Virus record (IMG/VR): IMGVR_UViG_3300021964_009390
Coordinates: 158,462-222,461 of that record
Reading direction: 5' to 3' (one strand)
Length of the DNA stretch: 64,000 bases
Under the pieces are notes generated by a model that made no database searches, was not told where the DNA came from, and saw only the letters and a list, made by a program, of their open reading frames with translations. Position 1 is the stretch's first letter. Each line of letters opens with the position of its first letter. Of the stretch, positions 196-60,100 are shown piece by piece. The translations under genes were made by a program, and so were the position numbers.

Positions 196-420
196 TTACA
201 GTACATTTTTAAGATTTCTACGCAATATGGTCAATTGCTCCCTTTTAACCTTACGTTTACTACGTTTTTTACGCTTAGTTACAGGTTTAAAACCAATAAA
301 AGTAGGTATTCTCGCATCACCATCAGCATAACCACCACCAACATCACCAAATACACCCCCTGCACCGGCTACATTATCTTCATTGATAGTTTTAACGAAA
401 TAACTTTTAAATAGATTCAT
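196..420 (-). CDS. Small late protein, possible internal head protein
   Basis: 74 aa. N-terminus MNLFKSYFVKTINE, then a Gly-rich segment and a basic tail (KRKKRSKRKVKR). CATAAATA on minus at 452-459. Confidence 0.55.
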   Translation of the reverse strand: MNLFKSYFVKTINEDNVAGAGGVFGDVGGGYADGDARIPTFIGFKPVTKRKKRSKRKVKREQLTILRRNLKNVL

Positions 421-448
421 GGATTATGTGTGTAAAGTATACTATAAT
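420..448 (+). promoter_or_regulatory. Sigma70-like promoter of uvsY
   Basis: TGGATT(420-425)-N17-TATAAT(443-448); ATG 9 nt downstream. Confidence 0.55.
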
Positions 449-456
449 AAGTATTT

Positions 457-852
457 ATGGATGTAATAGAGCAATATATACTAGAACTTGAAAAAGATGT
501 TAAGTTGGACCAGTTCAACATACGGGATTGCCAAATGAAACTACCGGCATACAAGCATAAATGGGTAGGTCGTCTGATGAGACACAAGCACGAAGTAGTA
601 AAACTAAACCAAAAGAAACAATCTCTTAAAAAAACAGTCGTGAACAAGATACAAAGCGCTAGTACATACAAGGTATCAAAACCAGCTGCAGAAAAAGCGG
701 CTAGTACACATGATAGTATAGTGGATATAACCAATAAGATAGATGAACTCAACGTAATCATTGAATTTTTAGAAAAATCCGAGCGGATACTGAGCAGCAT
801 GACGTTTGATATAAAAAACCTTGTAGAAATCATGAAACTAGAAACAACATGA
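457..852 (+). CDS. uvsY: Recombination mediator UvsY
   Basis: 131-aa helical protein ending FDIKNLVEIMKLE (UvsY-type C-terminus); overlaps the uvsW start (ATGA). Confidence 0.75.
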   Translation: MDVIEQYILELEKDVKLDQFNIRDCQMKLPAYKHKWVGRLMRHKHEVVKLNQKKQSLKKTVVNKIQSASTYKVSKPAAEKAASTHDSIVDITNKIDELNVIIEFLEKSERILSSMTFDIKNLVEIMKLETT

Positions 853-2309
853 ACAAGTTGGTACAGCTGAGTTGGGATAATACTAAAAATGTTGCTATTA
901 TCAAGTGTGATCCAGATCTATTTGGTCACATCAGAGAACAATTCAGTATACCGAACAAGCAATACAGATTTCAGCGTCGTTTCTCCCGATACACCCCTAA
1001 GAGGTTGTATGCTATCACACCAACTGGTCGCTTTTTACCTGGAATATTTTATGAAATAAAGAAATTTATAAATGATACATACAACAACATATCATTTGGT
1101 TATAGTAATGTGTTTTTAAACAACATAAAACCCCGATATTTTATAGATGATCTAGCCAGTTTACGATTAGATTTAAGAGACTATCAACAAAATATAGTAA
1201 AAAAATGCCTGCAAATAGGTAGAGGTGTAGTAGTACTAGCCACTGCCGGTGGTAAAACCCTCACAACAGCATGCTTGGTAGAGTCTATATATAAAAAATG
1301 TGAAAAAACTAACGATTTTAAATGTTTAGTGATAGTACCCACTCTAAATCTAGTACATCAAACACATTCAGATTTTGAAGACTACAATGTATCATTCACA
1401 ACATGTAAATGGACCGGTGATGAACCGTTAGACCCGACATCCAATGTGATTGTAGCCAATGTAGGTATCTTACAAAGCTCAAAAACAGATATTGACTGGA
1501 TAAAATACATAGATCTATTAGTCGTTGATGAAGTACACATGCTAAGAAAAGGTAATAAAATAAACAAACTTGTGTCAAGTATCATAACCCCTAACAAATA
1601 CGGTCTGACTGGTACTTTACCAGAATGTAAGTTAGATCAATGGAATATATACGGCTTGATAGGACCTAAATTATACGAGAAATCGAGCAAAGATTTGAGA
1701 GATCAAGAATTTATAGGTAATGTACAGGCACAAGTACTCAAATTATCTTACAACCAATCACCGGAGCATTGCACCAACCCTAATGATAGATACAGAAAAG
1801 AAGTAGAATTTTTAACAAAAAATACATACAGAAATAAACTAATTGCACGACTATGTAAGAATTTTAAAAACAATTGTTTAATAATGGTAGATTATATAGA
1901 ACATGGTCAGTTAATCCATGACAACATAATAGAACAAAACCCAGACAAACAAGTATATTATATAAAAGGAGATGTAGAGATTGAAGAGCGAGAGAAGATA
2001 AGACAGTTGATGGAACAACATGATGATATAGCTATTGTAGCAATATCAAAAATATTCTCCACTGGAATCAATATTAAAAATTTACACTATATTGTTTTTG
2101 CTGGTGGTGGTAAAGCTAAAATAAAAATAATACAAAGTATAGGAAGAGGTTTAAGATTGCATAATGGTAAGAAAGATCTTATAATAGTAGATATTATGGA
2201 CCAACTAACATATGGGATCAAACATGGGCAAAAAAGACTCACTTTATATGACGATGAAAAAATCAAATACAACATCAAAACCGTTGAAGAAACGAAAACG
2301 AGCGAGTAG
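849..2309 (+). CDS. uvsW: SF2 DNA helicase UvsW
   Basis: LRDYQ Q-motif, Walker A ATAGGKT, DEVH, GLTGT, STGINI, QSIGRGLR. Confidence 0.95.
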   Translation: MNKLVQLSWDNTKNVAIIKCDPDLFGHIREQFSIPNKQYRFQRRFSRYTPKRLYAITPTGRFLPGIFYEIKKFINDTYNNISFGYSNVFLNNIKPRYFIDDLASLRLDLRDYQQNIVKKCLQIGRGVVVLATAGGKTLTTACLVESIYKKCEKTNDFKCLVIVPTLNLVHQTHSDFEDYNVSFTTCKWTGDEPLDPTSNVIVANVGILQSSKTDIDWIKYIDLLVVDEVHMLRKGNKINKLVSSIITPNKYGLTGTLPECKLDQWNIYGLIGPKLYEKSSKDLRDQEFIGNVQAQVLKLSYNQSPEHCTNPNDRYRKEVEFLTKNTYRNKLIARLCKNFKNNCLIMVDYIEHGQLIHDNIIEQNPDKQVYYIKGDVEIEEREKIRQLMEQHDDIAIVAISKIFSTGINIKNLHYIVFAGGGKAKIKIIQSIGRGLRLHNGKKDLIIVDIMDQLTYGIKHGQKRLTLYDDEKIKYNIKTVEETKTSE

Positions 2310-2727
2310 AAAAGACACAAACACTTACGTAAACCAGAAAGAGTTTATGGAAGCCCTCCGTGTGTATTACGATACTGATGAAATTAGCACCGAACTCGCT
2401 ACATACGTTAAGAAAATTGCTGAAGGGCTATCATATGCACCAAATTTTATAAATTATACTTATAAAGACGAGATGGTTGGTGACGCTATACTCAAAATGA
2501 TGCAGGCACTAGAGTATAAAAAATTTGACTTAGAGAACAGAGACAATCCTTTTGGTTATTTTACAACAATCGCGTTTCATGCTTTTATTAATCGAATTAA
2601 AAAAGAAAAAAAGCAACGCGAAACAATTAATGATTACCAGGAACAAGTGTATCAAGAGTTGATGAATGACGGTTCATCAGCGACAGGTGCGCATGTATAC
2701 ATAGCTGATAGTACAGACGACGAATAA
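2254..2727 (+). CDS. gp55: Late-transcription sigma factor gp55
   Basis: YVNQKEF...KIAEGLSYAPNFINYTYKDEMVGDA...NPFGYFTTIAFHAFINRIKKEKKQ is the gp55 signature. Start uncertain (track 2212; ATGs at 2248/2254). Confidence 0.92.
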   Translation: MKKSNTTSKPLKKRKRASRKDTNTYVNQKEFMEALRVYYDTDEISTELATYVKKIAEGLSYAPNFINYTYKDEMVGDAILKMMQALEYKKFDLENRDNPFGYFTTIAFHAFINRIKKEKKQRETINDYQEQVYQELMNDGSSATGAHVYIADSTDDE

Positions 2728-6820: not shown

Positions 6821-6828
6821 TATAAATA
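6821..6828 (+). promoter_or_regulatory. T4-type late promoter
   Basis: Perfect TATAAATA, ATG 6 nt downstream. Confidence 0.7.
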
Positions 6829-6833
6829 GTAAC

Positions 6834-7052
6834 ATGCCAACAACTAAAAAAGCAAAAACTACAAAAACTTCAGCCCCAGACTACAAAATCGTACTTGAAG
6901 AAGTGTTAGATCTGAGCTCAGCTCTAGTTAGAGAGATTGACAACATTATGGAGTCACAATTACCACCGGCTCAAGTTGGTAAAGTTTTAGGTGATGTGGT
7001 TTCCGGATTTCAACAGAGACTAGAAGAATATAAAGTATCCGCGAAACTATAA
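6834..7052 (+). CDS. Small hypothetical late protein
   Basis: Track ORF 6801-7052; ATG 6834 lies 6 nt after a perfect TATAAATA (6821-6828). Confidence 0.6.
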   Translation: MPTTKKAKTTKTSAPDYKIVLEEVLDLSSALVREIDNIMESQLPPAQVGKVLGDVVSGFQQRLEEYKVSAKL

Positions 7053-7059
7053 ATTTATA

Positions 7060-7088
7060 TTGATATATTCACATATATACTCTATAAT
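7060..7088 (+). promoter_or_regulatory. Sigma70 promoter of gp43
   Basis: TTGATA-N17-TATAAT; GTG 7 nt downstream. Confidence 0.8.
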
Positions 7089-7094
7089 TAGAGT

Positions 7095-9701
7095 GTGTAT
7101 AGGAATATAATTTACGACGCTAAAAACGAAACGTGTAAACTCTTCACGTGGGACAACTCTGGAAACCGGGTGTGTTATGACACGAGTTTCAACCCGTATG
7201 TGTACTATGAAACTAATGGTAAATCTAACGGTAAGAGCATATTCAATACCGCGGTAAAAAAACGATCATTCCGGACACAATACGATCGATACAAATTTGT
7301 AAAAGACTGCGGTGTAAAAAGGGTATTTGAAAATATACCTAGTGAACAACAATTTTTAATAGATCAGTACTGGGAAAAAAACGAATCTCCGGAATTCACA
7401 GAAAATCCTTTGAAGGTATTATTTATAGACATTGAAACATACAGCCCAGATTCATTTCCAGATGTAGATAACCCCTCTCACCCAATCAATGTAGTAACCA
7501 TATACGATACATTACAAAATAAATTTTATTCTTGGGGTACCAAACAATACGATACTACAGATATTGAAACACCCGGTGGTAGCATTGTTAAAAAAGACAT
7601 ATTATACTATCATTGCAAAACAGAAGTTGAGATGCTACGTCGCTTCTTGGATTATATAAAAAATGATTACCCGGATATCATAACTGGTTGGAATAGTGAA
7701 TTATTTGACATACCATACATAATTTCACGAATGGGTCGTATCTTGGATGAGAATGAATATAAACAACTGAGCCCTGTAGGTGAAGTGTTCTGCCGTGAGA
7801 TCGCCGGTCAGTTTGGCAAGAGCCGTTTCCGGTGGTATATAAAAGGTGTTTCTAGTTTAGATTACCTAGATATATACAAGAAATTCAGCATGGGTCTCCG
7901 GGAGAATTACAAACTCGACACCATTGCACAGTTCGAACTAGGTGATAAAAAAATAGACTATGGCGGTATGAATCTAGCTCAATTAGCAGATGAAAATTGG
8001 AAAACATTCGTAGACTACAACATACAAGACGTAAACCTACTTGTCCGGATGGAAGAGAAGTTGCAGTACCTTAAACTGCTGAGAATGTTGGCGTATGTGG
8101 GACTATCACCACTAGAAAGCGCCATGGGGACATTAACTGTAATCACAGGTGCATCCGTCATACAAGCACGTAAAGACGGCTATGTAATACCAACATTTAT
8201 AAAAGAAAACACAAAAGATGGTAAATACGAAGGAGCGTATGTAGGAGAACCAGAGCGTGGTTTTCAACAAGACATTGTAAGTTTTGATGCTAACAGTCTA
8301 TATCCTAGTACCATGATAACACTGAATTTGTCACCGGAAACTAAAATAGGTTCTGTTGTAGAGAAAACCCCGGATCATATAACAGTGAAGCATGTGAACG
8401 GTAAGTTATTCAATTTATCACACGATAAATTCTTAAAATTCATCAAAAAAGAAAAAATAGCTATAACAAAAGCTAAAGCACTGTTTAGCCAAAAAACAAA
8501 AGGCATCATACCTAAAATTGTAGACAAGCTGTATGCGCAACGTGTTGAGTTCAAAAAGGAATTGGATAGAACACGCCGTGAGTTATCAAAACTTGATCCC
8601 GAAACATCAGAATATCAAAACAAAAAAAATGAATCTGAAACTTGGTGGGTAAAACAATATACAGTAAAAATATTGATCAACAGTATATACGGTTACTTCG
8701 GTAACAAATATGCACCTATGGGAGACAGTGACATCGCGCGAAGCATAACATTAACTGGCCAAGCTGTTATCAAGCAATCAAATAAAATACTGTATGATTA
8801 TATAAAACAAATGACAGGTAATGACAACTTACGTGTTGAAGATGTAGTCAAATATAATGATACGGACTCAAGCTACATTAGTATAAAATGTATAAATGAC
8901 AGCAAATCTCTTGAGCTGTGTGAATCCGGTAAAGTTGCTGATCATACATATAAAATAGTACAAGACATTGAGGATCATTTGAACGTGGAGATTACTAAAT
9001 GGGCTCAACGTAATTTAAATAGTCACGATCCCCGGTTCGTTTTCAAACGAGAGTGTATAGCAGATGTAGGTATGTTTCTAGAAAAAAAGAGATATGTTCT
9101 ACATGTGTTAGATGATGAAGGTATACCTGTTGATAAGTTCAAGTACACCGGTGTAGAGGTAGTGAGAACCACCATACCCGAACCTGTGAAGCCGTATATT
9201 AAGAAAATAATCGAAACAATGCTCACCACTCGAAACCTAGGTGAAACCAACAAGCTGTTGCATGAAACATACGATATATTCAAGAGTTTGGAAGTAGAAG
9301 ACATCGCTTTCGCGATGGGTTGTAAGGAATATGATAAATATGCCAGTAGATGTGATGAGTTTAACACGTGCAAAGGTATGCCGATCCATGTGAAAGCTAG
9401 TTATATACACAACAAAATCTTAGAAAAATTAAATATTGAGAACAAATATGAATCTATCGGTAATGGTGACAAGGTGAGATACTTGTATGTACAACAACCG
9501 AACAGATACGGGGTGAATGCCATAGGTTACAAGTACTATTATCCGGATGAATTCAAAGAAATATTCAAAGTGGATCGAGAATTAATGTTTGACAAGATTG
9601 TATATAGTATCATCGAAAGATTTTACGATTGTGTGAAATGGAAAGCAAAAAAACCTGGCATGGCAGTACAGACTGATTTATTTGAACTGTTCTCTACATG
9701 A
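7095..9701 (+). CDS. gp43: Family B DNA polymerase gp43
   Basis: ExoI FIDIETY, ExoII GWNSELFDIPY, ExoIII YNIQDV, SFDANSLYPS, KILINSIYG, NDTDS, KKRY. GTG start. Confidence 0.97.
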   Translation: MYRNIIYDAKNETCKLFTWDNSGNRVCYDTSFNPYVYYETNGKSNGKSIFNTAVKKRSFRTQYDRYKFVKDCGVKRVFENIPSEQQFLIDQYWEKNESPEFTENPLKVLFIDIETYSPDSFPDVDNPSHPINVVTIYDTLQNKFYSWGTKQYDTTDIETPGGSIVKKDILYYHCKTEVEMLRRFLDYIKNDYPDIITGWNSELFDIPYIISRMGRILDENEYKQLSPVGEVFCREIAGQFGKSRFRWYIKGVSSLDYLDIYKKFSMGLRENYKLDTIAQFELGDKKIDYGGMNLAQLADENWKTFVDYNIQDVNLLVRMEEKLQYLKLLRMLAYVGLSPLESAMGTLTVITGASVIQARKDGYVIPTFIKENTKDGKYEGAYVGEPERGFQQDIVSFDANSLYPSTMITLNLSPETKIGSVVEKTPDHITVKHVNGKLFNLSHDKFLKFIKKEKIAITKAKALFSQKTKGIIPKIVDKLYAQRVEFKKELDRTRRELSKLDPETSEYQNKKNESETWWVKQYTVKILINSIYGYFGNKYAPMGDSDIARSITLTGQAVIKQSNKILYDYIKQMTGNDNLRVEDVVKYNDTDSSYISIKCINDSKSLELCESGKVADHTYKIVQDIEDHLNVEITKWAQRNLNSHDPRFVFKRECIADVGMFLEKKRYVLHVLDDEGIPVDKFKYTGVEVVRTTIPEPVKPYIKKIIETMLTTRNLGETNKLLHETYDIFKSLEVEDIAFAMGCKEYDKYASRCDEFNTCKGMPIHVKASYIHNKILEKLNIENKYESIGNGDKVRYLYVQQPNRYGVNAIGYKYYYPDEFKEIFKVDRELMFDKIVYSIIERFYDCVKWKAKKPGMAVQTDLFELFST

Positions 9702-11252: not shown

Positions 11253-12640
11253 TTGATAGGTCTGTTAGCCCATCCGGGTCTCCATAGTATATCTTCTTTG
11301 ATAGTAGGAGCACCGGCCATTTTCCATGACGGTGTAGCGTCTGGTATCCCATCCCCATTAACATCCCAGTTCATTTGAGGCTGTGCTGGTTGAGCAGGTG
11401 CTGTAGCACCGGGTTGAGCAGGTTGTGTAGCAGCATCTCCGCCACCACCAGCTCCACTCATCATTGAAGATACTTTGCTGATACCATCACCTAGAGCACC
11501 TAAACCAACACCTACAGCCCCACCGGTATGTCCTCGAGATAAAACATCCTTGTCTGTAGCCGTTTGTTTCAAAGCTTCCATTGGCTCTAGACCTTGAGCT
11601 CTAAGCTCTTTATATTTTTGAAAACCAGCTAAACCACCAGCAGCAGCAAAACCTGCCCCGTACCGGGCAATAATCATAGGTAAAGCAGCTCCCATCGCCA
11701 AGCTAGCTGCCCCTAATATACCGACAGCAGCTGTTTTAGTTAAGTTGGGATTTTCCTTAACCCATCCCATAATTTTCTTCATCATGCCTTGCTTTTCACC
11801 ACCGGCCGCGGCTGGTTGCTCTTCTTTGTTACCAAAAATTCTATCATGCCCCATCCGGTATTTTTCACTACTATCACCAGCTTGCTGCGAACCGTCTATT
11901 TTTTGGTTCTCATTATCATCATACTGTTGAAGCTCTGCATCAGTAGGATTATTCGGGTCTAATTGCCCCGCAGGCATCGGTTTGTTTGCCACATCCGGTG
12001 CTTGCGTCTGTTGTGCTTGTGCCTGTTGATCATTATAACCTTGTTTGAAACCACCTGCAGCATCTTTCGCGCCAGTGGCAATAGCTTGTCCAGCTTTTTT
12101 AGCTCCTTTACCAATTGCTGTACCAACTTTTCCGAGACCTTTGGCAATGTTACCGAGTAACCCTTCATTATGTAAATATAAAATATGCTCGCGAATCATC
12201 TCCTTGTATTCATCTACTCCCTCGTTGACTGTTTGCGGTTCCGGTGAATTAGCTATTTGATTCTCTACCTGACCAGCCCCCTCTTCATCTAGCGCTTGAT
12301 CTAACGCTTGGGGCCCTTCTTGAGCTGCTGTTGTGACTTTGACCAAAGTATCTGGATCATTTGCCTTCAACCATTCTATAGCCTTCTGTATAACTGGTTG
12401 TAACATCTTATCGTTAACTGTTTGAGCGATGTTTTGCACTCCGGTTTTAGCTGCTCCTACAGCTTTACCGGCCAGATTACCCAAGGTTCCCATGAGACCC
12501 TCTTCTATTAAAATTTGTTCCACCAGTTGTGCTGTCAATTCAGTATCATACTGGTAACCCTCAGCAAAAATGCGTCTGACACGCTGTGTCCTGGCACGTC
12601 TCTCAAAACTTTCGAAAATTAAATGATTGTCTCTGTTCAT
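11249..12640 (-). CDS. Late Gly/Ala/Gln-rich protein, candidate internal/ejected virion protein
   Basis: 463 aa, convergent on uvsX; CATAAATA 10 nt upstream; repeated xE-G sites, amphipathic helices and hydrophobic Gly-rich segments. Confidence 0.6.
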   Translation of the reverse strand: MNRDNHLIFESFERRARTQRVRRIFAEGYQYDTELTAQLVEQILIEEGLMGTLGNLAGKAVGAAKTGVQNIAQTVNDKMLQPVIQKAIEWLKANDPDTLVKVTTAAQEGPQALDQALDEEGAGQVENQIANSPEPQTVNEGVDEYKEMIREHILYLHNEGLLGNIAKGLGKVGTAIGKGAKKAGQAIATGAKDAAGGFKQGYNDQQAQAQQTQAPDVANKPMPAGQLDPNNPTDAELQQYDDNENQKIDGSQQAGDSSEKYRMGHDRIFGNKEEQPAAAGGEKQGMMKKIMGWVKENPNLTKTAAVGILGAASLAMGAALPMIIARYGAGFAAAGGLAGFQKYKELRAQGLEPMEALKQTATDKDVLSRGHTGGAVGVGLGALGDGISKVSSMMSGAGGGGDAATQPAQPGATAPAQPAQPQMNWDVNGDGIPDATPSWKMAGAPTIKEDILWRPGWANRPIN

Positions 12641-12643
12641 AGC

Positions 12644-12672
12644 TTGAATTATTTATGTTAGTATACTATAAT
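12644..12672 (+). promoter_or_regulatory. Sigma70 promoter of queC operon
   Basis: TTGAAT-N17-TATAAT; ATG 6 nt downstream; its spacer contains the opposite-strand late motif. Confidence 0.8.
12650..12657 (-). promoter_or_regulatory. T4-type late promoter of the 463-aa gene
   Basis: CATAAATA on minus, 10 nt before ATG 12640. Confidence 0.65.
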
Positions 12673-12677
12673 TATGT

Positions 12678-13388
12678 ATGAAAAAATGCATAATCCCGGT
12701 CAGCGGTGGTATAGACTCATCAACCATACTGTATTATACACACAAATCACGCAAGGATTTTGATGAAATACATACAGTCACTTTTGATTATGGTCAGAGG
12801 CATAGCAAAGAGATTGAACATGCCGAATTGATAACCAAAAATGTCAGCACCAGTCACAAAGTTTTAGATGTAACATTTTTAAAAAACATTATAACGTCTA
12901 GCTCATTGACCAATGATAGTATAGATGTAGCAAAAACTGCAGATGTACTAGGTGACCCACAAACCGTCAATTATGTACCTAACAGAAACATGATCTTACT
13001 ATCCATTTGTACTGGTTATGCGGAGAGTATCGGAGCCAGCGTTGTGTACCATGGCGCCGCACAAGTTGATAGTGAGGCTGGTTATTGGGATGGTACTCAA
13101 GAGTTTATTAGTTGCATGAACCTAGTGAACAGTTTGAACAGACGAGATCGGGTGACTATTGAAGCACCTCTGTTACAAATGTCAAAACAACAAATAATTA
13201 AACTAGGTGTAGATAGTGATTTGGATTTCAGTAAAACGTGGACCTGTTATGAAGGTGGTACTAAAGCATGTGGTAGATGCACCGCATGCAGTAGCAGAAT
13301 CAAAGGATTCGTAGATAATAAATTAATTGACCCAGTGGAGTATGAAATAGATATACCATGGGACAAATACAACTGCGAGAGACTGTAA
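12678..13388 (+). CDS. queC: 7-cyano-7-deazaguanine synthase QueC family
   Basis: PP-loop SGGIDS, FDYGQRH, YVPNRN, YWDG, and Zn site TWTCYEGGTKACGRCTACSSR. Confidence 0.93.
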   Translation: MKKCIIPVSGGIDSSTILYYTHKSRKDFDEIHTVTFDYGQRHSKEIEHAELITKNVSTSHKVLDVTFLKNIITSSSLTNDSIDVAKTADVLGDPQTVNYVPNRNMILLSICTGYAESIGASVVYHGAAQVDSEAGYWDGTQEFISCMNLVNSLNRRDRVTIEAPLLQMSKQQIIKLGVDSDLDFSKTWTCYEGGTKACGRCTACSSRIKGFVDNKLIDPVEYEIDIPWDKYNCERL

Positions 13389-14061: not shown

Positions 14062-14765
14062 TGAAAAATAAAAAAATTGAACTTAAACCTATACTCATTG
14101 TGAGCTGTACTCAAAATGAATCATGGAAAGATACAAGATTAGGATCATGTAAAGCCAGCTTGGAAAACCAAGCTAAATTCAAGTTTGTAACAAACAATAA
14201 ACAAGGACTACCTAAATGTTATAATAAATTTTTAACAAAAAAAATAGCAGAAAAACATGATATAATTGTATTTTGTCATGATGATTTATATATAGATGAT
14301 TTAAAATTGCGAGGAAAATTATACAAATCGCTATACGCCGACAAATATGATATTGTCGGCCTCGCCGGTGCTAGTACATGCAAAATAGAACATGGTAAAC
14401 CTACCCTGTGGCATTTGATGAGCGAGCGAGATACATGGAGCGGTACTGTTTTCCACCCGCGTGGTGTTGATACAAATCAAGTGATGTCTACAACGTTCGG
14501 ACCAACTCCATCTAGATGTCTCGTGTTAGATGGTGTGTTTCTTGCAGTGAACATACACCGTGCCCGGGAGAAAAAATGGAAATTTAATGATACATTTGAC
14601 TTTCATCATTATGACATAGCTAGCTGTATTGATGCAAATACCAAGCAATTGAAACTCGGTACATGTATGATACACGCTATTCACGACTCTCCCGGCTTAC
14701 ACTCTATAGAAGACCCAGACTGGCTGTCTAGCCAGGACAAATTTTTAAAGTTGTATGGTGAGTAA
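14061..14765 (+). CDS. GT-A glycosyltransferase (GT2-like)
   Basis: KCYNK, IIVFCHDD (DxD-like), DIVGLAG, VLDGVFLA, FDFHHYDIASC. Confidence 0.8.
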   Translation: MKNKKIELKPILIVSCTQNESWKDTRLGSCKASLENQAKFKFVTNNKQGLPKCYNKFLTKKIAEKHDIIVFCHDDLYIDDLKLRGKLYKSLYADKYDIVGLAGASTCKIEHGKPTLWHLMSERDTWSGTVFHPRGVDTNQVMSTTFGPTPSRCLVLDGVFLAVNIHRAREKKWKFNDTFDFHHYDIASCIDANTKQLKLGTCMIHAIHDSPGLHSIEDPDWLSSQDKFLKLYGE

Positions 14766-14779
14766 CAATACCTTATAAT
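14751..14779 (+). promoter_or_regulatory. Sigma70 promoter of gp41
   Basis: TTGTAT-N17-TATAAT; ATG 7 nt downstream. Confidence 0.75.
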
Positions 14780-14785
14780 ACTCAC

Positions 14786-16108
14786 ATGATAGGTATAGAC
14801 GAGCAGTTATTTGAGCACGTGCTCATATACAACTGTATGACAGATGAAAGGTATCTAGCTAGTGTGATAGATTATCTCAAACCGGAGCATATCAAAGACT
14901 CTAACATTAAGCAGACATACAATTTGTTAGTAGACTTTTACAATGATCACAGTGAGTTACCAAGCTCTACAGAAATTAAAACACGTTGTGATAATGACGA
15001 TTTAAAAGCCGCAGTCCGGATCACTGTGAGTTACATCAAGAATATCGATAAAAACTATAATAAAGATGAATTGTATAAAAACACAGAACAGTTCATTAAG
15101 GAACGTGCAGTGTATAGTACCTTGATGGAGGTTGTAGATCAAGGCTCTTCCGGGAGTTTAGAGCCGGCAGATCTATTAACTAAATTTGAATCTGCATGTA
15201 ACATTAATTTGAATGTTGATGTAGGTGTAAATTATTTTGAAGATATCGACCGGCATGTAGACGATATAAATAGAGAAGAGAAGTACGTGAGTACCGGTTG
15301 GCAATGGCTTGATAAAAAACTCAATGGGGGTTTTGTAGAAACTGGCCGGGCATTGTATGTTTTCGCTGGAGAGACTAATGTAGGTAAAAGTATATTGCTA
15401 GGTAATATAGCTACTAACTTATGTAAGCAGGGTAAAAATGTGTTGTTAGTTTCATTAGAAATGTCAGAGATGCTATACTCTAAGAGGTTGAGCTCAAACA
15501 TAGCACAGGTACCTATAAATGAGACTCATTTAAGTGTAGAATATTTGAAAGAATCTATTAAAAATTTTAAGAACACTCACAAAGATTGTTCTTTGATCGT
15601 CAAAGAGTTTCCTCCTAGTACCGTGACACCTCAACAACTAACAGCATATATTAATAAGTTATGCCAAACAGTGATGCGCCCAGACGCAATAGTACTAGAT
15701 TATATCAACCTGTTGAAAGGTCCACCTGGTACAAACAGTTATGAACAAATTAAAAAGGTAACTGAGAATGTAAGAGCCATGTCATATAAATTTGAATGCC
15801 CGGTCATCACCGCAACTCAGTTAAACCGTTCTGGTTACAACGAGACTGACCCGGGATTGGATACAGTCGGAGAAAGTTATGGTATGGGAGCAACAGCAGA
15901 TTGTGTGGTGAGTATATGGCAGCGAGATGAAGATGCTGAATTGAATGTAATCAATTTAGGTATGATGAAAAACCGGTTCGGTCCTAACTTCGGTACATGT
16001 GCGATGGATATAGACTATGGTACTTTGACAGTCACAGAACAAGAAAACGTGAACGAAACAGAACAGATGAATGAAACTATCGGTACCCTATCTATATTGA
16101 GCAATTAA
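14786..16108 (+). CDS. gp41: Replicative DnaB-like helicase gp41
   Basis: AGETNVGKS, SLEMSE, IVKEFP, IVLDYINL, TATQLNRSG, ESYG...TAD, KNRFG. Confidence 0.95.
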   Translation: MIGIDEQLFEHVLIYNCMTDERYLASVIDYLKPEHIKDSNIKQTYNLLVDFYNDHSELPSSTEIKTRCDNDDLKAAVRITVSYIKNIDKNYNKDELYKNTEQFIKERAVYSTLMEVVDQGSSGSLEPADLLTKFESACNINLNVDVGVNYFEDIDRHVDDINREEKYVSTGWQWLDKKLNGGFVETGRALYVFAGETNVGKSILLGNIATNLCKQGKNVLLVSLEMSEMLYSKRLSSNIAQVPINETHLSVEYLKESIKNFKNTHKDCSLIVKEFPPSTVTPQQLTAYINKLCQTVMRPDAIVLDYINLLKGPPGTNSYEQIKKVTENVRAMSYKFECPVITATQLNRSGYNETDPGLDTVGESYGMGATADCVVSIWQRDEDAELNVINLGMMKNRFGPNFGTCAMDIDYGTLTVTEQENVNETEQMNETIGTLSILSN

Positions 16109-20339: not shown

Positions 20340-20699
20340 ATGAAAGTAAGAAACAATTTGTACACCCCTAGTTATTTCATGAAACGTATGAAAGACAATG
20401 GTTATGGTATATGGAAAGTGTTTGACAAATACGGTCCACACGACAGCAGATACTGGACCATGTTGATCGACCCTGGAGGGTTCTCGGTATGGGTCACATG
20501 TTATTTTAATAAAGAGGAGTTGAATGATGTGTATTTTGAACTGGACGATGGTGGTAACCGAATACCTAAAAAATTGCTGATAAAAACCGCTAGTATTGAA
20601 ACAATAATATCCAATTTAATGAAATTTGGTATAGATAATGAGACAAAGTTTGATTCTTCTATTATGGATATAAATAATCTCAATGACGCGAGAAAATAA
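20340..20699 (+). CDS. Hypothetical protein
   Basis: 119-aa ORF in the coupled operon. Confidence 0.6.
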   Translation: MKVRNNLYTPSYFMKRMKDNGYGIWKVFDKYGPHDSRYWTMLIDPGGFSVWVTCYFNKEELNDVYFELDDGGNRIPKKLLIKTASIETIISNLMKFGIDNETKFDSSIMDINNLNDARK

Positions 20700-23129: not shown

Positions 23130-23139
23130 ATAACTTTAC

Positions 23140-23337
23140 ATGAGCGACGAAATAAAATATACTGACAGGGTAGAACCTCGAATGATCGCGTCACCGTATG
23201 ATGGTAACACTGTGAAACCAAAATTGATCACTAAAGTGATGAATGGTTATCAAATTACAGAAGCCCATTGGCATTGCCCGACTACTGGTAGATTCATTCA
23301 AAAAGGCACTGTTGAGATTAAAAAAATAAAAAAATAA
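23140..23337 (+). CDS. Small hypothetical late protein
   Basis: 65 aa; CATAAATA 8 nt upstream. Confidence 0.55.
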   Translation: MSDEIKYTDRVEPRMIASPYDGNTVKPKLITKVMNGYQITEAHWHCPTTGRFIQKGTVEIKKIKK

Positions 23338-23345
23338 TTGTAGTG

Positions 23346-23374
23346 TTGCCAGGTAATATGTTGTAAGCTATAAT
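23346..23374 (+). promoter_or_regulatory. Sigma70 promoter of gp61
   Basis: TTGCCA-N17-TATAAT; ATG 7 nt downstream. Confidence 0.8.
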
Positions 23375-23380
23375 TCAACT

Positions 23381-36674: not shown

Positions 36675-36682
36675 TGTAAATA
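36675..36682 (+). promoter_or_regulatory. Late promoter of gp26-like gene
   Basis: TGTAAATA, GTG 6 nt downstream. Confidence 0.55.
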
Positions 36683-36687
36683 ATGGT

Positions 36688-37605: not shown

Positions 37606-37641
37606 GGTTGAAAAATATCAACACATGAATAAATTATATAG

Positions 37642-43042: not shown

Positions 43043-43050
43043 ATTAAATA
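43043..43050 (+). promoter_or_regulatory. Late promoter of gp48-like operon
   Basis: ATTAAATA, ATG 8 nt downstream. Confidence 0.6.
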
Positions 43051-43057
43051 TAGATAT

Positions 43058-47266: not shown

Positions 47267-47766
47267 TCCGCGACATCGTTATCTAAGTCATCTGTCACAC
47301 AATCCACGTCGATAACATCGCTTTTTTCCAAAAGCTTTTTAAAAATTTCTTCTCTAGTACCAATCAACTTAGTTTTATTATTATCATCATTTATTTGTTT
47401 TTTGGCCTCTATATCCATTTGCTTAATTTTTACTTGAGTATCTACGCGCTGGTTACTGGTATGTAGCTTGGTTAAATTATCTATTGCTGTACTAGTAGCT
47501 TTTAACAGTTCTGCAAAACTACCTATATCTTCTGCGTTTGGAGCAGCTGCAACATATTGCTTCATTATTTGCAACACATCAACACTATCCTTTATCAAAG
47601 TTCCTTGATTATCTAGTATAAACTGCTCTAGATCATGTTTATTTAAGTTCATTTTTTCAGCAGCAGCTACAAGCTCATCAGTATCCGACACACCACCTTG
47701 TAGTTGTTCTATTAAATCCTGAACACCATCAAATGGGTCTTCTTCTTGTTGGATTTGCTCCGTCAT
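47263..47766 (-). CDS. gp16: Terminase small subunit gp16-like
   Basis: APNAEDIGSFAELLKA...AIDNL.KL and NNKTKLIGTREEIFKKL parallel the gp16 PRAYEV..QL.K / NN.L.VGST.EL.K motifs. ATG 47766 lies 6 nt from CTAAATA (track start 47808). Confidence 0.65.
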   Translation of the reverse strand: MTEQIQQEEDPFDGVQDLIEQLQGGVSDTDELVAAAEKMNLNKHDLEQFILDNQGTLIKDSVDVLQIMKQYVAAAPNAEDIGSFAELLKATSTAIDNLTKLHTSNQRVDTQVKIKQMDIEAKKQINDDNNKTKLIGTREEIFKKLLEKSDVIDVDCVTDDLDNDVAD

Positions 47767-47786
47767 AATTATATTTAGACTGACAC

Positions 47787-47815
47787 TTGAAATATACAAT
47801 ACTATCATGTATAAT
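47787..47815 (+). promoter_or_regulatory. Sigma70 promoter of 49-aa ORF-dut-gp44
   Basis: TTGAAA-N17-TATAAT; ATG 7 nt downstream. Confidence 0.8.
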
Positions 47816-47821
47816 ATTGAA

Positions 47822-47971
47822 ATGATATCTATAACAGTAAACGGGGTGGATTATAAATTACCACCGGAGAAGTTTTCAGTATTGTTAAGTTGGTTACAAT
47901 CTAACGGCGCTATTAAAGTGTTAGAAGCATCAAATCCAGACCAAGACGGGAGGACATTAATAAATGAGTGA
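47822..47971 (+). CDS. 49-aa early ORF not in the ORF track
   Basis: MISITVNGVDYKLPPEKFSVLLSWLQSNGAIKVLEASNPDQDGRTLINE*; ATG 7 nt after TATAAT; overlaps the dut start. Confidence 0.6.
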   Translation: MISITVNGVDYKLPPEKFSVLLSWLQSNGAIKVLEASNPDQDGRTLINE

Positions 47972-49600: not shown

Positions 49601-50191
49601 TTAAGACATATAATCCATAGTGTAATTACCGCCTTTTTTCCCGGGTGTATTTTTCTCCGGTAGTTTACCACCCACTTCATGTAACTTACCGGTACCATCA
49701 TCTGCTTTTCTTGTTTGATTCTCCGGGCTATCTGGTACTTCTTCTGTCGTTAAAGATACTGGTTCTGGTTTAATTGTTACACGTTCTGGTCCTCTCCAGC
49801 TATCCGGTATAGGAGCTCCAGCACGCTCTCCACCTGGTGCTAAAAATTCACACAAATTAGCTGGTAGTTCTATTTTAGAGTAAGGACATTGCATACCCGG
49901 GGCTAATTCCCTTGCGATCACCGCGCTAATATCATCATGCTCACCGGTAACACCGTCCACAAACAAGTTTAAATCTCCCTCATGCAACTCCTTTACAATA
50001 TCCTGTACAGAACTAGGTTGTTGCTTAAACCAATCGCTAGAAAGTATATTTTCAACAAATTTTACACGGTCACCCGGTGTCAAACCACCCGTTCTTTCTC
50101 GGTTATGAGGTATTCTAAATTGTGTAGATTCATCTACAATCTCAAACCGTTTCATTTCTCTAGCGAAGGATTCATTAAATTTACTGCTCAT
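49601..50191 (-). CDS. Late hypothetical protein, candidate internal head protein
   Basis: MSSKFNESFAREMKRFE N-terminus; tandem TAAATAAATA immediately upstream. Confidence 0.6.
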   Translation of the reverse strand: MSSKFNESFAREMKRFEIVDESTQFRIPHNRERTGGLTPGDRVKFVENILSSDWFKQQPSSVQDIVKELHEGDLNLFVDGVTGEHDDISAVIARELAPGMQCPYSKIELPANLCEFLAPGGERAGAPIPDSWRGPERVTIKPEPVSLTTEEVPDSPENQTRKADDGTGKLHEVGGKLPEKNTPGKKGGNYTMDYMS

Positions 50192-50195
50192 ACTA

Positions 50196-50266
50196 TATTT
50201 ATTTAGTCAATCACTAGTAATTTAAAAGCTAACAAACAATTGTTAATTGAACTCGCGTAATAAATA
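50196..50266. promoter_or_regulatory. Divergent late promoters (50191 ORF / gp25)
   Basis: TAAATAAATA on minus at 50196-50205; AATAAATA on plus at 50259-50266, 6 nt before the gp25 ATG. Confidence 0.65.
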
Positions 50267-50271
50267 ATAGT

Positions 50272-50793
50272 ATGGCGTTGAACATATCCACATTAAAACC
50301 AAAAAAACTAGGCACAACACTAACTGATGGTAAATCAACATACAAGGACATCTCAGATGTATTTGAACTCAAATCAGATTCATCTGGATCACAACTGTAT
50401 GGTGAAAGTCTATCCAAGGACCTAGCTACGGATGTAGATTATAAAGCTATAAGCAACAGCTTACAAAATATATTCAACACGTCACCTGGTGAAAAAATTT
50501 TAAACCCAGCATTTGGGGCAGATTTGAAGAGATATTTGTTTGAACCTATAGATGAAACAACCGCGGAAGTGATAGGTAATGTTATTGTCAAAGCTATAAA
50601 ACTGTATGAACCGCGTGTGACTATAAAAAATGTACAAGTCATCGCTCGCCCGGATGAAAATGAATATATCTTAAATATATTTTTAGAAATACCGGCAATT
50701 AAAACAAGGGATAAAGAGTTTAAATTTAACGGTAAACTAACTGACAGAGGTGTAATGACACAAAGCAACGCATCCGGCCGGTCCGAAATATAA
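50272..50793 (+). CDS. gp25: Baseplate wedge gp25
   Basis: AISNSLQNIF.T.PGEKILNPAFGADL..YLFEP, AI..YEPRV. Confidence 0.9.
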   Translation: MALNISTLKPKKLGTTLTDGKSTYKDISDVFELKSDSSGSQLYGESLSKDLATDVDYKAISNSLQNIFNTSPGEKILNPAFGADLKRYLFEPIDETTAEVIGNVIVKAIKLYEPRVTIKNVQVIARPDENEYILNIFLEIPAIKTRDKEFKFNGKLTDRGVMTQSNASGRSEI

Positions 50794-57119: not shown

Positions 57120-57134
57120 AACTCTACATAGTTT

Positions 57135-57142
57135 ATTAAATA
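57135..57142 (+). promoter_or_regulatory. Late promoter of the 57150 gene
   Basis: ATTAAATA, ATG 8 nt downstream. Confidence 0.6.
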
Positions 57143-57149
57143 TAAATGT

Positions 57150-60100
57150 ATGCCTAACCAACGAACATACTACTCTAGTAACAAAGATATAGACGAGGTA
57201 TCTACTATAAACCCCCTGTCGTATGTGGAGTGGTTAAAATATGAAAATAGTTTTGACAAAAACACAGCTTTTGAACTGTATACTGTATATTTAAACAATT
57301 GGTACACTACTAATACCAAGGTTACAGCAGAACAGCAACAACAATATGTAAGAAACCAATATATTCAATTGTTAAAGCAGATCACACTAGAATATACAAC
57401 TGCTGATGAAAAAAGATTTTTGTCAAACTTAGATTATACAGACAACAAAGATTTAGACGTAGCGTTACCGTTCTTCAGCAAAAAAATCAAACAAATAGCA
57501 ATATACTACGCTAGTCAACGTGAAGAGATAAAGTATTCAAAAATTAAAAACAATCTGAAGGGTAGTGATTTTGGTATGAGTCAAATAATATACAAGCAAT
57601 TTGCTGACACTATCGCTAATGACACACAAATTGTGGAACAACTACAAGACTTAAACTTGACTTTGAACGATGTTTTGTTAAATCTGGAAATATCTGTAGA
57701 AGAGCTGTACGATACAGAGCAAAATTATTATAATATTTCGCCCGGAAGCGACAAAAAAGAATACACAACATTCAACAACTCACCACGTTACAATTATTTT
57801 GACATGTCCATACTACCTACAAGTTCGCGGATGTTCATACAAGAGTTGTACACCCAGGCAGTTATTGATTTGATAAAAGAAGTCCCAGTGATGCTATTAT
57901 CAACCAAAGGTGATGATGCTAATTACGAAAATGAAACACTAGTGTACGCTACCGGTGAGGCAATAGCCATATCCGAAACTGTGACCGGTACCGAACTAGA
58001 TCGGTTGGATGCTAGTGCGTTTATCAACTACACAGACACTGGAGCTTTAAATATAAGTTACGAACAATTAGCATTTCAAAAATATTCCGGGACTGACTAT
58101 TTTTATCTCAGCACTGGTGACAGTTTGACAGACACTATAACCGGTCAATTGTTCACGGCCACTGCTGCGCATAAGAACATTCTCAACAGACATCACCCAA
58201 CAATAGCCAGTGTCACTGGGGAGAATTTGTATAAATTAGAATATTTAGGGGGATTTTTCTTAGGTACCGGTATAGGTCTCGCCAGCTTTGCATCATTTGA
58301 TTTTGAATACAAGTTCAAGCCAGAATTAAACACGGTAATGTATTTTCCAGATCCCCAGGTAGGATCAACCGGTTATTTTGGCGCGTATGAAAAGTTCAAA
58401 GCCCCGGTGCAATACTATGAAAACGTAAATTGGAACAAACAATCTGTAGTAACCACATACAATTATGGCTTGCAATCACAGTTGGATAACATGCCTAGGT
58501 TCACTGCTTACCAGTCATCAGAGCACATACTCAACGAACCTACCGGAGTGTTCCGGTACAATGATGTATATGATTTTTGGACACCTACAGGGCAAAATGT
58601 GTGGCTCAACGAAGATATATATGATAAGCAGCAACAGCAATCGGACATAGACGATAGACAATTACAACTTCACACTGGTCAAAAAATAGTATACAAATGG
58701 AAGACGGATATTTACGGTAACAACTATGCACTAGTGAAAAACAATATCTCTCCAGAAAAAACACCACCGGTTAATACAGCCAGTAATATAACTGAGAGTG
58801 AATATGTTACAAGCACATCTACTAACAAAAGCGCCAACATATCTAAATATGAATGGCATAATAAAACCGAAGGGACCACTCATGGACGAAAAAATTTGTC
58901 AGAACAAAAAGAATCTCCCGGGGAATTGTACATCAGAAACAACACGTTTACTGGTATACATTTAGTAACCGATACAATATTTTCAGATGTGTATCAAAAA
59001 TACGTTATATCCGGGACTGTAGAATATAAAGAACGGACAATAACAATTAGCGATATTGGTGCCGAGATTGTAAGCAATTTAATAGACATTGACATAATAC
59101 AGGACATAATTATATTAGAAACTGATTCATACATAATTTTTGAAAAATTGTCATATGATTACGACACTGGTCGGATATATAGTGACAATAAAAATTATAC
59201 GTTCATTGTAAAAAGGTATTACGGTAACAGTTACAACATGACAGGTAATTGGTGGTTTGATGAAGACAAGCAACGGATCTTAGTATGTCAGACCAATGTA
59301 CACCCGACGTATCAAAACACAAACGACAAAATGATATACATTATTTTATATAATTTTGATATTAATACTTTGAAATTGAGGCAAGCGTACCCGGACCCAG
59401 ACTACACTGCCGCTCAATTGGTATACGAAACAAGTCAGTATTCATTGAGTGCTATACCTAGTGAACACAACATCGTGAAAGTAAAGCCACCCATGTTGAC
59501 ATTCAATAAAGATTCTGAACGTTACAGTGTATCACAATTGCAATTTGATTCCACCCGGAACCCATATTATCTCAAAACAGATTTCCGAATGTACATGGAA
59601 ACAATCGAGCTGATAAGAACTAACTTTTTTAAACACAATTACTTCAGTTACTCGTTAAACAGTTACAACGAGTCTGTTGAGGATTATTTTTACGAGACAA
59701 ACACAAGTATAACTACACCAACATGGTACCATGGAACCTCTGATGATGTAGTGTATATGGGTGCAACTGAAGCCGCAGGAGCACCAGTAGCTATTCCAGG
59801 CTACAGCAACAGCGTGTGGACATACGGTATAGACTCGGACAGCTACGAGTCTGAACGTGATATAATATTATCATTCGATTATTGTATGTTTGGCAATGCC
59901 GCGCCGTTTGGGTTAAGTGTATTGTTTTACAATTCAAGAAACAGTACAAACACTGGGTATGAAACAGTCGCATCAGGCGGTCTTGGCCCGGCTTTCAATT
60001 ATTTGAACGATACAACTACCGGTTCCGGAACTCAAGCTAGTTCGACCGGTTTGCAACACGGTCATGCTTGTGTGGCATTGGATGCAACCGGTAATTACGG

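What the first reader, a model, noticed from the sequence alone, without database searches (positions are those of the whole stretch)
420..57150. Genome-wide leaderless or near-leaderless mRNA design, with SD leaders kept for sheath and tube
Seen: sigma70 -10 boxes end 6-9 nt before the start codons of uvsY, gp43, the 9764 ORF, queC, gp41, gp61 and the 47822 ORF. Late (N)TAAATA boxes end 5-10 nt before the starts at 187, 6834, 12640, 23140, 24842, 24881, 27897, 29597, 29839, 31685, 35808, 36688, 43058, 47766, 50191, 50272 and 57150. Transcription should therefore begin at or next to the start codon, with no room for an SD. The high-copy gp18 and gp19 genes instead have ~20-nt leaders with AGGAAGGA/AGGAG. 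Downstream genes are mostly coupled by ATGA/TAATG overlaps. Inference: a two-tier translation strategy, and a clue to a host that translates leaderless mRNA efficiently and uses canonical -35/-10 promoters (which argues against Bacteroidota).
Basis: partly seen in the sequence, partly recalled or inferred. Interest (0 to 1): 0.62.

Follow-up and report, generated by a model that had tools for sequence, protein, structure and literature searches.

The report
Promoters abutting start codons, phage-wide
In this uncultured marine T4-like phage most operons have their promoter placed so that transcription should start on the first base of the start codon, giving messages with no leader and no ribosome-binding site, while the capsid, sheath and tube genes keep short leaders with a classical binding site.

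Summary
In the whole 222-kb phage (the window is its last 64 kb), TAAATA is followed exactly 5 nt later by an ATG/GTG opening a long ORF 38 times (background about 2 per offset, P~1e-33). TATAAT, and TTGNNN-N16-18-TANNNT, peak at exactly 6 nt. These are the spacings that put +1 on the start codon for a T4 late box and a sigma70 -10 box. Independent support: the base before these start codons is a pyrimidine in 38/40 late cases (54/119 in coupled genes), and only ATG or GTG occur. Box and spacing are kept at orthologous genes in 29 related contigs while the flanks diverge. A gp55 late sigma is encoded, and strong terminators sit just upstream. SD motifs are at background genome-wide. The 15 genes with a 5-nt SD include major capsid, sheath and tube. 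About 109 of 284 genes head such units, and 67 more follow by tight or overlapping coupling. No TSS data exist, so "leaderless" remains an inference from geometry. Eight other T4-like phages lack the pattern; pelagimyophages HTVC008M and Mosig show the late part (Melnitz weak). A SAR11 contig shows no such signature, so the host inference is weak. Precedent: Thermus phages YS40 and Lalka27a.

The parts
2254..2727 (+). gp55-type late sigma factor gene, the predicted reader of the TAAATA boxes
   Evidence: PHROG 234 'late sigma transcription factor' E 1.9e-31. tblastn with cyanophage and HTVC008M gp55 gives E 3e-20 and 1e-20.
443..459 (+). TATAAT box, 8 nt, ATG of uvsY (457-852)
   Evidence: UvsY by PHROG 231
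6823..6836 (+). late box TAAATA, 5 nt, ATG 6834 (72-aa ORF)
7054..7097 (+). TTGATA-N17-TATAAT, 6 nt, GTG of DNA polymerase gp43 (7095-9701)
   Evidence: The PHROG 262 profile aligns from residue 6.
12638..12680 (.). Back-to-back promoters: late box at N9 for the 12640(-) gene, and TATAAT at N5 for queC (12678+)
   Evidence: QueC by PHROG 1550
14745..14788 (+). TTGTAT-N17-TATAAT, 6 nt, ATG of gp41 helicase (14786)
   Evidence: PHROG 19
20671..20685 (+). late box, 6 nt, ATG 20683
23127..23142 (+). late box, 7 nt, ATG 23140
   Evidence: A late box is kept in the relatives.
23346..23383 (+). TTGCCA-N17-TATAAT, 6 nt, ATG of primase gp61 (23381)
   Evidence: The -35, the 17-nt spacer, the -10 and the 6-nt distance are all kept in relatives L006, L010 and L026.
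24840..24883 (.). Divergent pair of late boxes in a 38-bp intergenic region, serving 24842(-) at N9 and 24881(+) at N7
   Evidence: There is no room for any other promoter.
25300..25314 (+). TAAATA, 6 nt, ATG 25312, with TTGCCA upstream (hybrid -35 plus box)
26393..26408 (+). late box, 7 nt, ATG 26406
   Evidence: The box is not kept in the relatives, so this one is the least secure.
27895..27910 (-). late box, 7 nt, GTG 27897. Relatives have the box at 5 nt with GTG kept.
29595..29610 (-). late box, 7 nt, GTG of the large terminase (29597)
29828..29841 (+). late box, 5 nt, ATG 29839
   Evidence: The box, the spacing and the first 12 coding bases are kept in 7 relatives.
31674..31687 (+). late box, 5 nt, ATG 31685 (tube-like paralogue)
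32289..32317 (+). Sheath gp18: late box, then 20 nt holding AGGAAGGA, then ATG 32315. The predicted leader is about 15 nt and starts at the SD.
   Evidence: The leader is almost invariant in 12 of 14 relatives whose sheath is 60-84% identical.
35019..35045 (+). Tube gp19: late box, then 18 nt holding AGGAG, then ATG 35043
   Evidence: The SD leader is kept in more than 20 relatives.
35738..35776 (+). Strong intrinsic terminator after gp19 (13-bp stem plus T run)
   Evidence: A hairpin and T run are kept at this place in relatives. It isolates the next unit.
35797..35810 (+). late box, 5 nt, GTG 35808
   Evidence: The N5 spacing and GTG are kept in 7 relatives.
36677..36690 (+). late box, 5 nt, GTG 36688 (baseplate hub-like)
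37608..37644 (+). TTGAAA-N16-TAAATT, 6 nt, ATG 37642
43045..43060 (+). late box, 7 nt, ATG 43058. Relatives have it at 5 nt.
47764..47824 (.). Divergent pair: late box at N5 for 47766(-), and TATAAT at N6 for ATG 47822(+)
50189..50274 (.). Divergent pair of late boxes: 50191(-) at N8/N4 and 50272(+) at N5 (baseplate wedge)
57137..57152 (+). late box, 7 nt, ATG 57150 (1145-aa protein)
185..198 (-). late box, 5 nt, ATG 187 (gene runs off the window's left end)

Best explanation
The phage places both of its promoter types at a fixed distance from the first gene of each transcription unit, so that RNA polymerase should start on the A or G of the start codon.

Early units use host sigma70-type promoters ((a)aagTTGACA, 17 bp, TATAAT) ending 6 nt before the start codon. 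Late units use the T4-type box (nATAAATA), read by the phage's own gp55 sigma, ending 5 nt before it. A minority end 6-9 nt before, which would leave 1-4-nt leaders.

The resulting mRNAs have no 5' UTR and no Shine-Dalgarno sequence. They would be bound through their 5'-terminal AUG or GUG (inferred: the 70S / initiator-tRNA / IF2 route known for leaderless mRNAs). Downstream cistrons also lack an SD. They are reached by termination-reinitiation across ATGA or TAATG overlaps, or across gaps of a few nt.

A small set of genes instead has a minimal 13-15-nt leader that begins at an SD (gp18, gp19) or an internal SD (major capsid protein). This most likely raises their translation above the leaderless baseline, to match the high copy number of these proteins in the virion.

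Shown: motif positions, statistics, conservation, the near-absence of SD, and the presence of gp55. Inferred: the actual TSS, the route of initiation, and the quantitative effect.
For: 1. Spacing peaks. TAAATA has 38 starts at N5 against about 2.2 background. TATAAT has 16 at N6, and the composite -35/-10 pattern has 26 at N6. Control motifs are flat.

2. N5 is the T4 geometry. The 8-bp late box starts at -13, so it ends at -6 (PMC2988020). N6 after a -10 hexamer that spans -12 to -7 is the standard sigma70 geometry (my own knowledge).

3. TSS-like dinucleotide. The -1 base is a pyrimidine in 38/40 late N5 heads and 35/45 early heads, against 54/119 in coupled genes (Fisher 6e-9). The +1 base is always A or G, and there are no TTG starts.

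4. gp55 is encoded in the window.

5. Relatives. In 182 kb from 29 related contigs TAAATA-N5 occurs 46 times. Orthologous genes keep the box, the spacing and even GTG, while sequence upstream of the box diverges. Several N7/N9 sites in the window are N5 in relatives.

6. No alternative promoter space. There are divergent pairs in 38-80-bp spacers, and a 13-bp-stem terminator lies 30 nt upstream of the box of gene 35808.

7. SD is nearly absent. 4-mers occur upstream of 27/284 genes against 6.8% background, and the SD-to-start histogram is flat where T4's is peaked.

8. An SD of 5 nt or more is found at only 15 genes, including capsid, sheath and tube.

9. Marine metatranscriptome contigs covered only gp18 and gp19 within 31620-37600. 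This fits these being the most abundant messages.

10. Census. 109 heads plus 67 coupled followers make 176 of 284 genes.
Against: - No transcript 5' ends were available. The only RNA data were assembled contigs, which cannot show starts.
- The TSS distance is extrapolated from T4 in E. coli and from sigma70 in general. A shift of 1-3 nt would give short leaders, or would destroy the codon.
- About 30 late sites have N6-N9 spacing, so they are not strictly leaderless.
- 18 of the 90 exact-hexamer heads needed a start codon other than the one first called, mostly one further downstream.
- 51 genes fit no class.
- gp33 and gp45 homologues were not found by tblastn.
- The scaffold gene, also high-copy, has no SD.
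- GUG-initiated leaderless mRNAs are translated very poorly in E. coli (PMC4633059). The 9 GTG heads therefore need a host that tolerates them.
Confidence: 0.78

Rival explanations
1. The boxes are promoters, but transcription starts 1-4 nt upstream of the start codon at most sites. The messages would then carry very short leaders rather than none, and would be translated by a somewhat different SD-independent route.
For: 32 late sites have N6-N10 spacing. TSS choice by RNA polymerase commonly varies by 1-2 nt (general knowledge).
Against: The peaks are sharp and single-offset, at N5 and at N6. The Y(-1)/R(+1) signature sits exactly at the start codon in the N5 class and is absent at the start codon in the N6-N9 classes. 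Relatives convert N7/N9 sites to N5.
Confidence: 0.12
2. TAAATA-N5-ATG is not a promoter but an AU-rich translation enhancer (S1-binding or Kozak-like) inside longer transcripts that come from unseen upstream promoters.
For: The genome is AT-rich and SD-poor, so some SD-independent signal is needed for leadered genes. A-rich contexts enhance initiation in some SD-poor bacteria (general knowledge).
Against: The same box stands about 20 nt upstream of gp18 and gp19, with an SD between box and start. The early class has a full -35 / 17-bp / -10 architecture, which has no translational meaning. Divergent gene pairs and terminators leave no room for other promoters. Tightly coupled internal genes, which also need initiation, lack the box. 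gp55 is encoded.
Confidence: 0.05
3. The pattern is an artefact of choosing start codons to fit the motif, or of AT-rich composition.
For: 18 heads required moving the called start. TAAATA and TATAAT are common words in a 39% GC genome.
Against: The histograms are motif-centred and use any ATG/GTG that opens an ORF of 60 aa or more. Permuted and reverse-complement hexamers give flat profiles. Orthologous N-termini align from codon 1. AT-rich T4, XG4 and P-SSM2 show no peak.
Confidence: 0.02

Closest known systems
Thermus phages phiYS40 and Lalka27a (experimentally mapped leaderless phage transcriptomes)
   Same: Most phage transcripts begin with the A or G of the initiation codon, and a phage-specific late promoter class is involved (bioRxiv 10.64898/2026.04.20.719267).
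   Different: - Those phages infect Thermus (I recall the phylum as rich in leaderless mRNAs).
- Their late box is TAGGGT, not the T4 box.
- They are not T4-like.
- Their case is shown by RNA 5'-end mapping, whereas here it is only predicted.
- Here an SD tier for top structural proteins is added.
T4 late transcription (gp55/gp33/gp45 acting on a TATAAATA box at -13 to -6)
   Same: The box consensus is the same (nATAAATA), there is no -35, the spacer is AT-rich, a gp55 homologue is encoded, and the boxes stand before structural genes on both strands (PMC2988020).
   Different: In T4 the box-to-start distances are spread out with no N5 peak, and genes carry SDs. Here the box abuts the start codon. 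gp33 and gp45 were not detected by simple similarity.
Pelagimyophages HTVC008M and Mosig (SAR11) and Melnitz (OM43)
   Same: TAAATA-N5-ATG is enriched. HTVC008M has 11 cases in 100 kb by the ORF test, and 14 against 4 control genome-wide. Mosig has 11 against 3. These are also marine myophages, and I noted a tmRNA gene in this phage as well.
   Different: - HTVC008M keeps clear SD peaks, has no sigma70 N6 peak, and SD-leads many genes.
- Melnitz is weak (5 against 3).
- Core proteins of the present phage are at most 35% identical to any cultured phage.
- The literature reports that late promoters could not be found in pelagimyophages (PMC7029224).
Leaderless mRNAs of mycobacteria
   Same: A 5'-terminal ATG or GTG, but not TTG, is necessary and sufficient there (PMC4633059). 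The same codon rule is seen at the N5 heads here.
   Different: That is a host chromosomal feature shown by Ribo-seq and reporters. Here the pattern is a phage genome design, and the host is unknown.

Membership tests
Leaderless mRNA (5' UTR of 0 to about 5 nt) | The primary 5' end coincides with the first base of the start codon | not testable with these tools
   Only assembled metatranscriptome contigs were available. The geometry (N5 and N6) and the Y(-1)/R(+1) signature predict it.
Leaderless mRNA (5' UTR of 0 to about 5 nt) | No Shine-Dalgarno sequence, and no room for one, between promoter and start | tested here: met
   There are 5-9 nt between box and start. An SD 4-mer is present in 4 of the 90 exact-hexamer heads, which is background level.
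Leaderless mRNA (5' UTR of 0 to about 5 nt) | The start codon at the 5' end is ATG or GTG | tested here: met
   The N5 class has 31 ATG and 9 GTG. The only TTG hits lie inside long ORFs.
T4-type late promoter | A TATAAATA-like box with no -35 element, upstream of late (structural) genes | tested here: met
   The position matrix shows an invariant TAAATA (by construction), A at the preceding position in 27/40, and no conserved upstream positions. The genes served are terminase, baseplate, tube-like and tail genes.
T4-type late promoter | A phage-encoded gp55 late sigma factor | tested here: met
   Window 2254-2727, PHROG 234, E 1.9e-31.
T4-type late promoter | gp33 co-activator and gp45 sliding-clamp activator | tested here: inconclusive
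   tblastn with Syn9 gp33 and HTVC008M gp45 found nothing. Both are small or fast-evolving proteins. The clamp loader gp44 is present at window 48674-49600.
Sigma70 -35/-10 promoter | TTGACA-like hexamer, 16-18 bp spacer, TATAAT-like hexamer | tested here: met
   The peak appears only with the correct spacer: 19 of the 26 N6 cases have N17, and an 11-13 nt spacer control is flat. The architecture is conserved at the primase gene in relatives.
Translational coupling (termination-reinitiation) | Stop and start overlap or lie within a few nt on the same strand, without an SD | tested here: met
   There are 31 overlaps of 4 nt and 16 of 1 nt, and 119 genes have gaps of 15 nt or less, of which 106 lack an SD 4-mer. 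Function was not tested.

The most novel reading that the evidence does not exclude
A whole uncultured marine T4-like lineage, and in part the SAR11/OM43 myophages, has rewired T4-style early and late transcription so that nearly all transcription units are leaderless and more than 60% of genes are expressed with no SD at all. This would imply one of two things. Either abundant marine hosts translate 5'-AUG and 5'-GUG mRNAs far better than E. coli, without showing it in their own gene architecture, or the phage actively biases ribosomes toward leaderless initiation during infection.
Probability: 0.3. Interest if true: 0.75.

Novelty: new variant of a known kind. Interest (0 to 1): 0.58.

Why it matters
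- **Translation without an SD.** If confirmed, this would be, as far as my literature searches show, the first T4-like phage whose gp55 late promoters and host-type early promoters are both set to give leaderless messages. It would show that a large (222-kb) lytic phage can run almost entirely without Shine-Dalgarno initiation.
- **Annotation.** The rule (box + 5 nt, or -10 + 6 nt, = start codon) fixes gene starts and operon heads in this clade. It also explains why published searches failed to find late promoters in pelagimyophages.
- **A testable model of dosage.** The design suggests how virion stoichiometry could be set at the level of translation initiation: leaderless baseline, SD boost.
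- **Host biology.** It bears on how abundant marine bacteria initiate translation.

Tried and rejected
- **RNA evidence.** Four marine metatranscriptome runs hold only 7-9% of the words of the stretch searched. They are kept as contigs, which lie only on gp18 and gp19 and cannot show 5' ends. The contig ends at 32312-32325 and at 35099 are not evidence of a TSS.
- **Host search.**
  - The sheath search in genome contigs found no relative.
  - 'relatives' cannot be drawn for a virus record.
  - The best cultured relatives are cyanophages at 31-35% identity, which is uninformative.
- **Phage-encoded translation factors.** No ribosomal protein S21 or S1 domain was found. The phage tRNA-Met(CAT) has a paired G1-C72 and A31-U39, so it is not a bacterial initiator tRNA.
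- **Host mirroring.** Three Pelagibacteraceae genomes show only a slight excess of TATAAT-N6-ATG over the reversed control. A 294-kb contig shows no -10-to-start peak. The idea that the phage pattern copies a SAR11-type host pattern was therefore dropped.
- **5' structure.** Leaderless heads are less folded than internal windows, but no less than coupled gene starts. This is not diagnostic.
- **Literature.** Searches for 'leaderless' together with T4-like, late promoter or Pelagibacter found no prior description.

Full report
**What the window is.** The 64-kb window is the last part (158462-222461) of a 222,461-bp IMG/VR virus record rated complete. It is a T4-like myophage. PHROG scans identify UvsY, DNA polymerase gp43, QueC, helicase gp41, primase gp61, large terminase, sheath gp18, tube gp19 and baseplate proteins. 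Pfam adds UvsX/RecA, gp32 and a 5'-3' exonuclease. Its polymerase, terminase and capsid proteins are at most 31-35% identical to those of any cultured phage; the nearest are cyanomyophages. Related contigs and RNA runs are marine.

**Check of the observation.** The late box TAAATA ends 5 nt before eight of the listed starts, 7 nt before six, and 8 or 9 nt before three. TATAAT ends 6 nt before gp43, gp41, gp61 and the 47822 ORF, 8 nt before uvsY and 5 nt before queC. At 9764 the box at 6 nt is TATCAT.

To avoid circular start-codon choice I used motif-centred histograms over the whole genome. For each motif occurrence I recorded the distance to any ATG or GTG that opens an ORF of 60 aa or more.

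| Motif | Occurrences | Peak | Background per offset | Poisson P |
|---|---|---|---|---|
| TAAATA | 307 | 38 at N5; then 9, 11, 9, 5 at N6-N9 | about 2.2 | 1e-33 |
| TATAAT | 381 | 16 at N6, 8 at N7 | 2.2 | 2e-9 |
| TTGNNN-N16-18-TANNNT | 799 | 26 at N6 | 4.4 | 2e-12 |

Nineteen of the 26 composite cases have a 17-bp spacer. Permuted hexamers, reverse complements, a wrong -35 and a wrong spacer are all flat.

**Why these distances mean 'leaderless'.** The T4 late box is an 8-bp element whose first base is -13 (PMC2988020). It therefore ends at -6, and five bases separate it from +1. A sigma70 -10 hexamer spans -12 to -7, leaving six bases (my own knowledge). The two sharp peaks, N5 and N6, are exactly the spacings that put +1 on the first base of the start codon.

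A second, independent signature agrees. In the 40 late N5 heads the base before the start codon is a pyrimidine in 38, and the first base is always A or G (31 ATG, 9 GTG, no TTG). In 119 tightly coupled internal genes the -1 base is a pyrimidine in only 54 (Fisher 6e-9). Early heads give 35 of 45. Pyrimidine at -1 and purine at +1 is the usual preference of bacterial RNA polymerase at start sites (my own knowledge). The N6-N9 classes do not show the bias at the start codon.

**Are the boxes promoters?**
- A gp55-type late sigma factor lies in the window at 2254-2727 (PHROG 234, E 2e-31; tblastn).
- The same box stands about 20 nt before gp18 and gp19, with an SD in between, so it is not tied to the start codon as such.
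- Divergent gene pairs (24842/24881, 47766/47822, 50191/50272) share spacers of 38-80 bp that hold only two back-to-back boxes.
- The strongest terminator of the region (13-bp stem, 35738-35766) sits between gp19 and the box of the GTG gene at 35808.
- The early class has the full -35 / 17 bp / -10 architecture, which has no translational meaning.

**Comparative evidence.** Twenty-nine related contigs (sheath 60-84% identical) were fetched.
- In their 182 kb, TAAATA-N5 occurs 46 times.
- At orthologous genes the box, the 5-nt spacing and even GTG start codons are kept, while the sequence upstream of the box is free to vary.
- Several window sites with N7 or N9 are N5 in the relatives.
- The primase promoter keeps TTGACA-like, 17 bp, TATAAT and 6 nt.
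- The gp18 leader is almost invariant, and the gp19 SD leader is kept in more than 20 contigs.

**SD usage.** SD 4-mers lie in -20..-4 of only 27 of 284 genes (9.5%), against 6.8% in random windows. The SD-to-start histogram is flat in this genome, whereas T4 gives clear peaks.

Only 15 genes have a 5-nt SD core. They include the major capsid protein (genome 4150, AGGAG), sheath and tube. They also include a late-promoter gene with a 23-nt leader and AGGAGGT, and an Hsp20 gene with AAGGAGGTGA. The predicted gp18 and gp19 leaders are only about 13-15 nt and begin at the SD.

The two-tier idea therefore holds, and extends to the capsid gene, but it is not perfect: the scaffold gene has no SD.

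**Census.**

| Class | Genes |
|---|---|
| Late box abutting the start | 64 |
| Early-type promoter abutting the start | 45 |
| Coupled (gap 15 nt or less) | 109, of which 67 follow a leaderless head directly |
| SD of 5 nt or more | 15 |
| Unclassified | 51 |

Many of the unclassified genes lie in a gene-poor stretch at 66-94 kb. Overlaps of 4 nt (31) and 1 nt (16) dominate the coupled class.

**RNA data.** Four marine metatranscriptome runs hold a small share of the stretch. Their contigs lie only on gp18 and gp19 within 31620-37600. This fits these being the most abundant messages, but it says nothing about 5' ends. 'Leaderless' therefore remains a well-supported prediction.

**How special is it?**

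| Phage | Result |
|---|---|
| T4 (50 kb), cyanophage S-WAM1, Pseudoalteromonas phage XG4 | no peak in the ORF-based test |
| T4 (genome-wide count, 10 against 5 in the reversed control) | no clear excess |
| S-WAM1, XG4, Syn9, P-SSM2, phiM12, RM378, KVP40 | TAAATA-N5-ATG count equals the reversed control |
| A 91-kb relative (G001) | 16 against 3 |
| Pelagibacter phage HTVC008M | 11 in 100 kb by the ORF test; 14 against 4 |
| Mosig | 11 against 3 |
| Melnitz | 5 against 3 |

HTVC008M keeps strong SD peaks and has no sigma70 N6 peak, so it has only the late half of the design. A published study states that late promoters could not be detected in pelagimyophages (PMC7029224), and the Melnitz paper does not mention leaderless messages.

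The known precedent for a mostly leaderless phage transcriptome is Thermus phage YS40 and Lalka27a. In mycobacteria a 5' ATG or GTG suffices for leaderless translation, whereas in E. coli it is weak and GTG is nearly inactive (PMC4633059).

**Host.** Canonical -35/-10 boxes and extended SDs argue for a host with ordinary sigma70 and a usable anti-SD. The conserved GTG heads suggest a host that accepts 5'-GUG.

The host genome need not look leaderless, however. Pelagibacteraceae genomes show at most a slight excess of TATAAT-N6-ATG, and a 294-kb contig shows no peak. No host could be named.

**Verdict.** The feature is real, conserved and genome-wide. It is a new variant of a known kind (phage leaderless expression), here built on T4-type promoters and awaiting TSS mapping.

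Noticed in passing
outside the window: genome 32277-32660 (L035:778-1161): The phage carries a full one-piece tmRNA gene (Rfam RF00023, 90 bits, E 3e-35; also found by ARAGORN). Phage tmRNAs are reported mainly from marine myophages (PMC9004378).
   Followed up: partly
L002, L003, L009, L012, L015, L020, L021, L023, L025 (relatives' contigs): Many short related contigs (2.3-3.9 kb) hold only sheath plus tube and end 3-32 nt after the tube stop codon, at or before the 5' arm of the terminator seen in longer contigs. They look like assemblies of the gp18-gp19 transcript rather than of DNA.
   Followed up: partly
L034/L038 (Pelagibacter phage HTVC008M, NC_020484): There are 11-14 TAAATA(G)-N5-ATG sites before structural genes such as gp3, baseplate and head-closure genes. 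These are apparently the late promoters that PMC7029224 reported as undetectable in pelagimyophages.
   Followed up: partly
window 30697-30724 and 35738-35766: Two long, perfect, A/T-flanked hairpins could act as bidirectional terminators, one after gene 29839-30672 and one after gp19. The first overlaps the TTG that opens the longest reading of the next ORF, whose true start (GTG 30762?) is unclear.
   Followed up: no
window 18023-18068 (gp32 gene 18066-18953): gp32 has a perfect TTGAAA-N17-TATAAT promoter, but 14 AU-rich nucleotides without an SD lie before its ATG. It is one of the few early genes with a short leader, which recalls gp32 autoregulation on its own leader in T4.
   Followed up: no
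window 27912-29597 (-), large terminase: The terminase starts with GTG here, and apparently with TTG 8 nt after the late box in six related contigs. A weak start is thus conserved for a low-copy enzyme.
   Followed up: no
window 12678-14765: QueC (PHROG 1550) is followed by a glutamine amidotransferase-domain protein. This is probably a 7-deazaguanine DNA-modification module.
   Followed up: no
outside the window: genome 73968-74420 (-): An Hsp20 small heat-shock gene carries the best SD of the genome (AAGGAGGTGA, 7 nt before the ATG). It may be a host-derived gene that kept its native ribosome-binding site.
   Followed up: no
outside the window: genome 78905-78980 and 80307-80382: tRNA-Met(CAT), not initiator-like (G1-C72 paired), and tRNA-Thr(TGT) lie in a gene-poor stretch (66-94 kb). 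There, small ORFs have AAGGA-type SDs and no abutting promoters.
   Followed up: no
outside the window: genome about 80-128: A 25-nt unit is repeated in tandem at the very start of the contig (seen in the upstream context of the first ORF). It may be a terminal repeat or an assembly edge.
   Followed up: no
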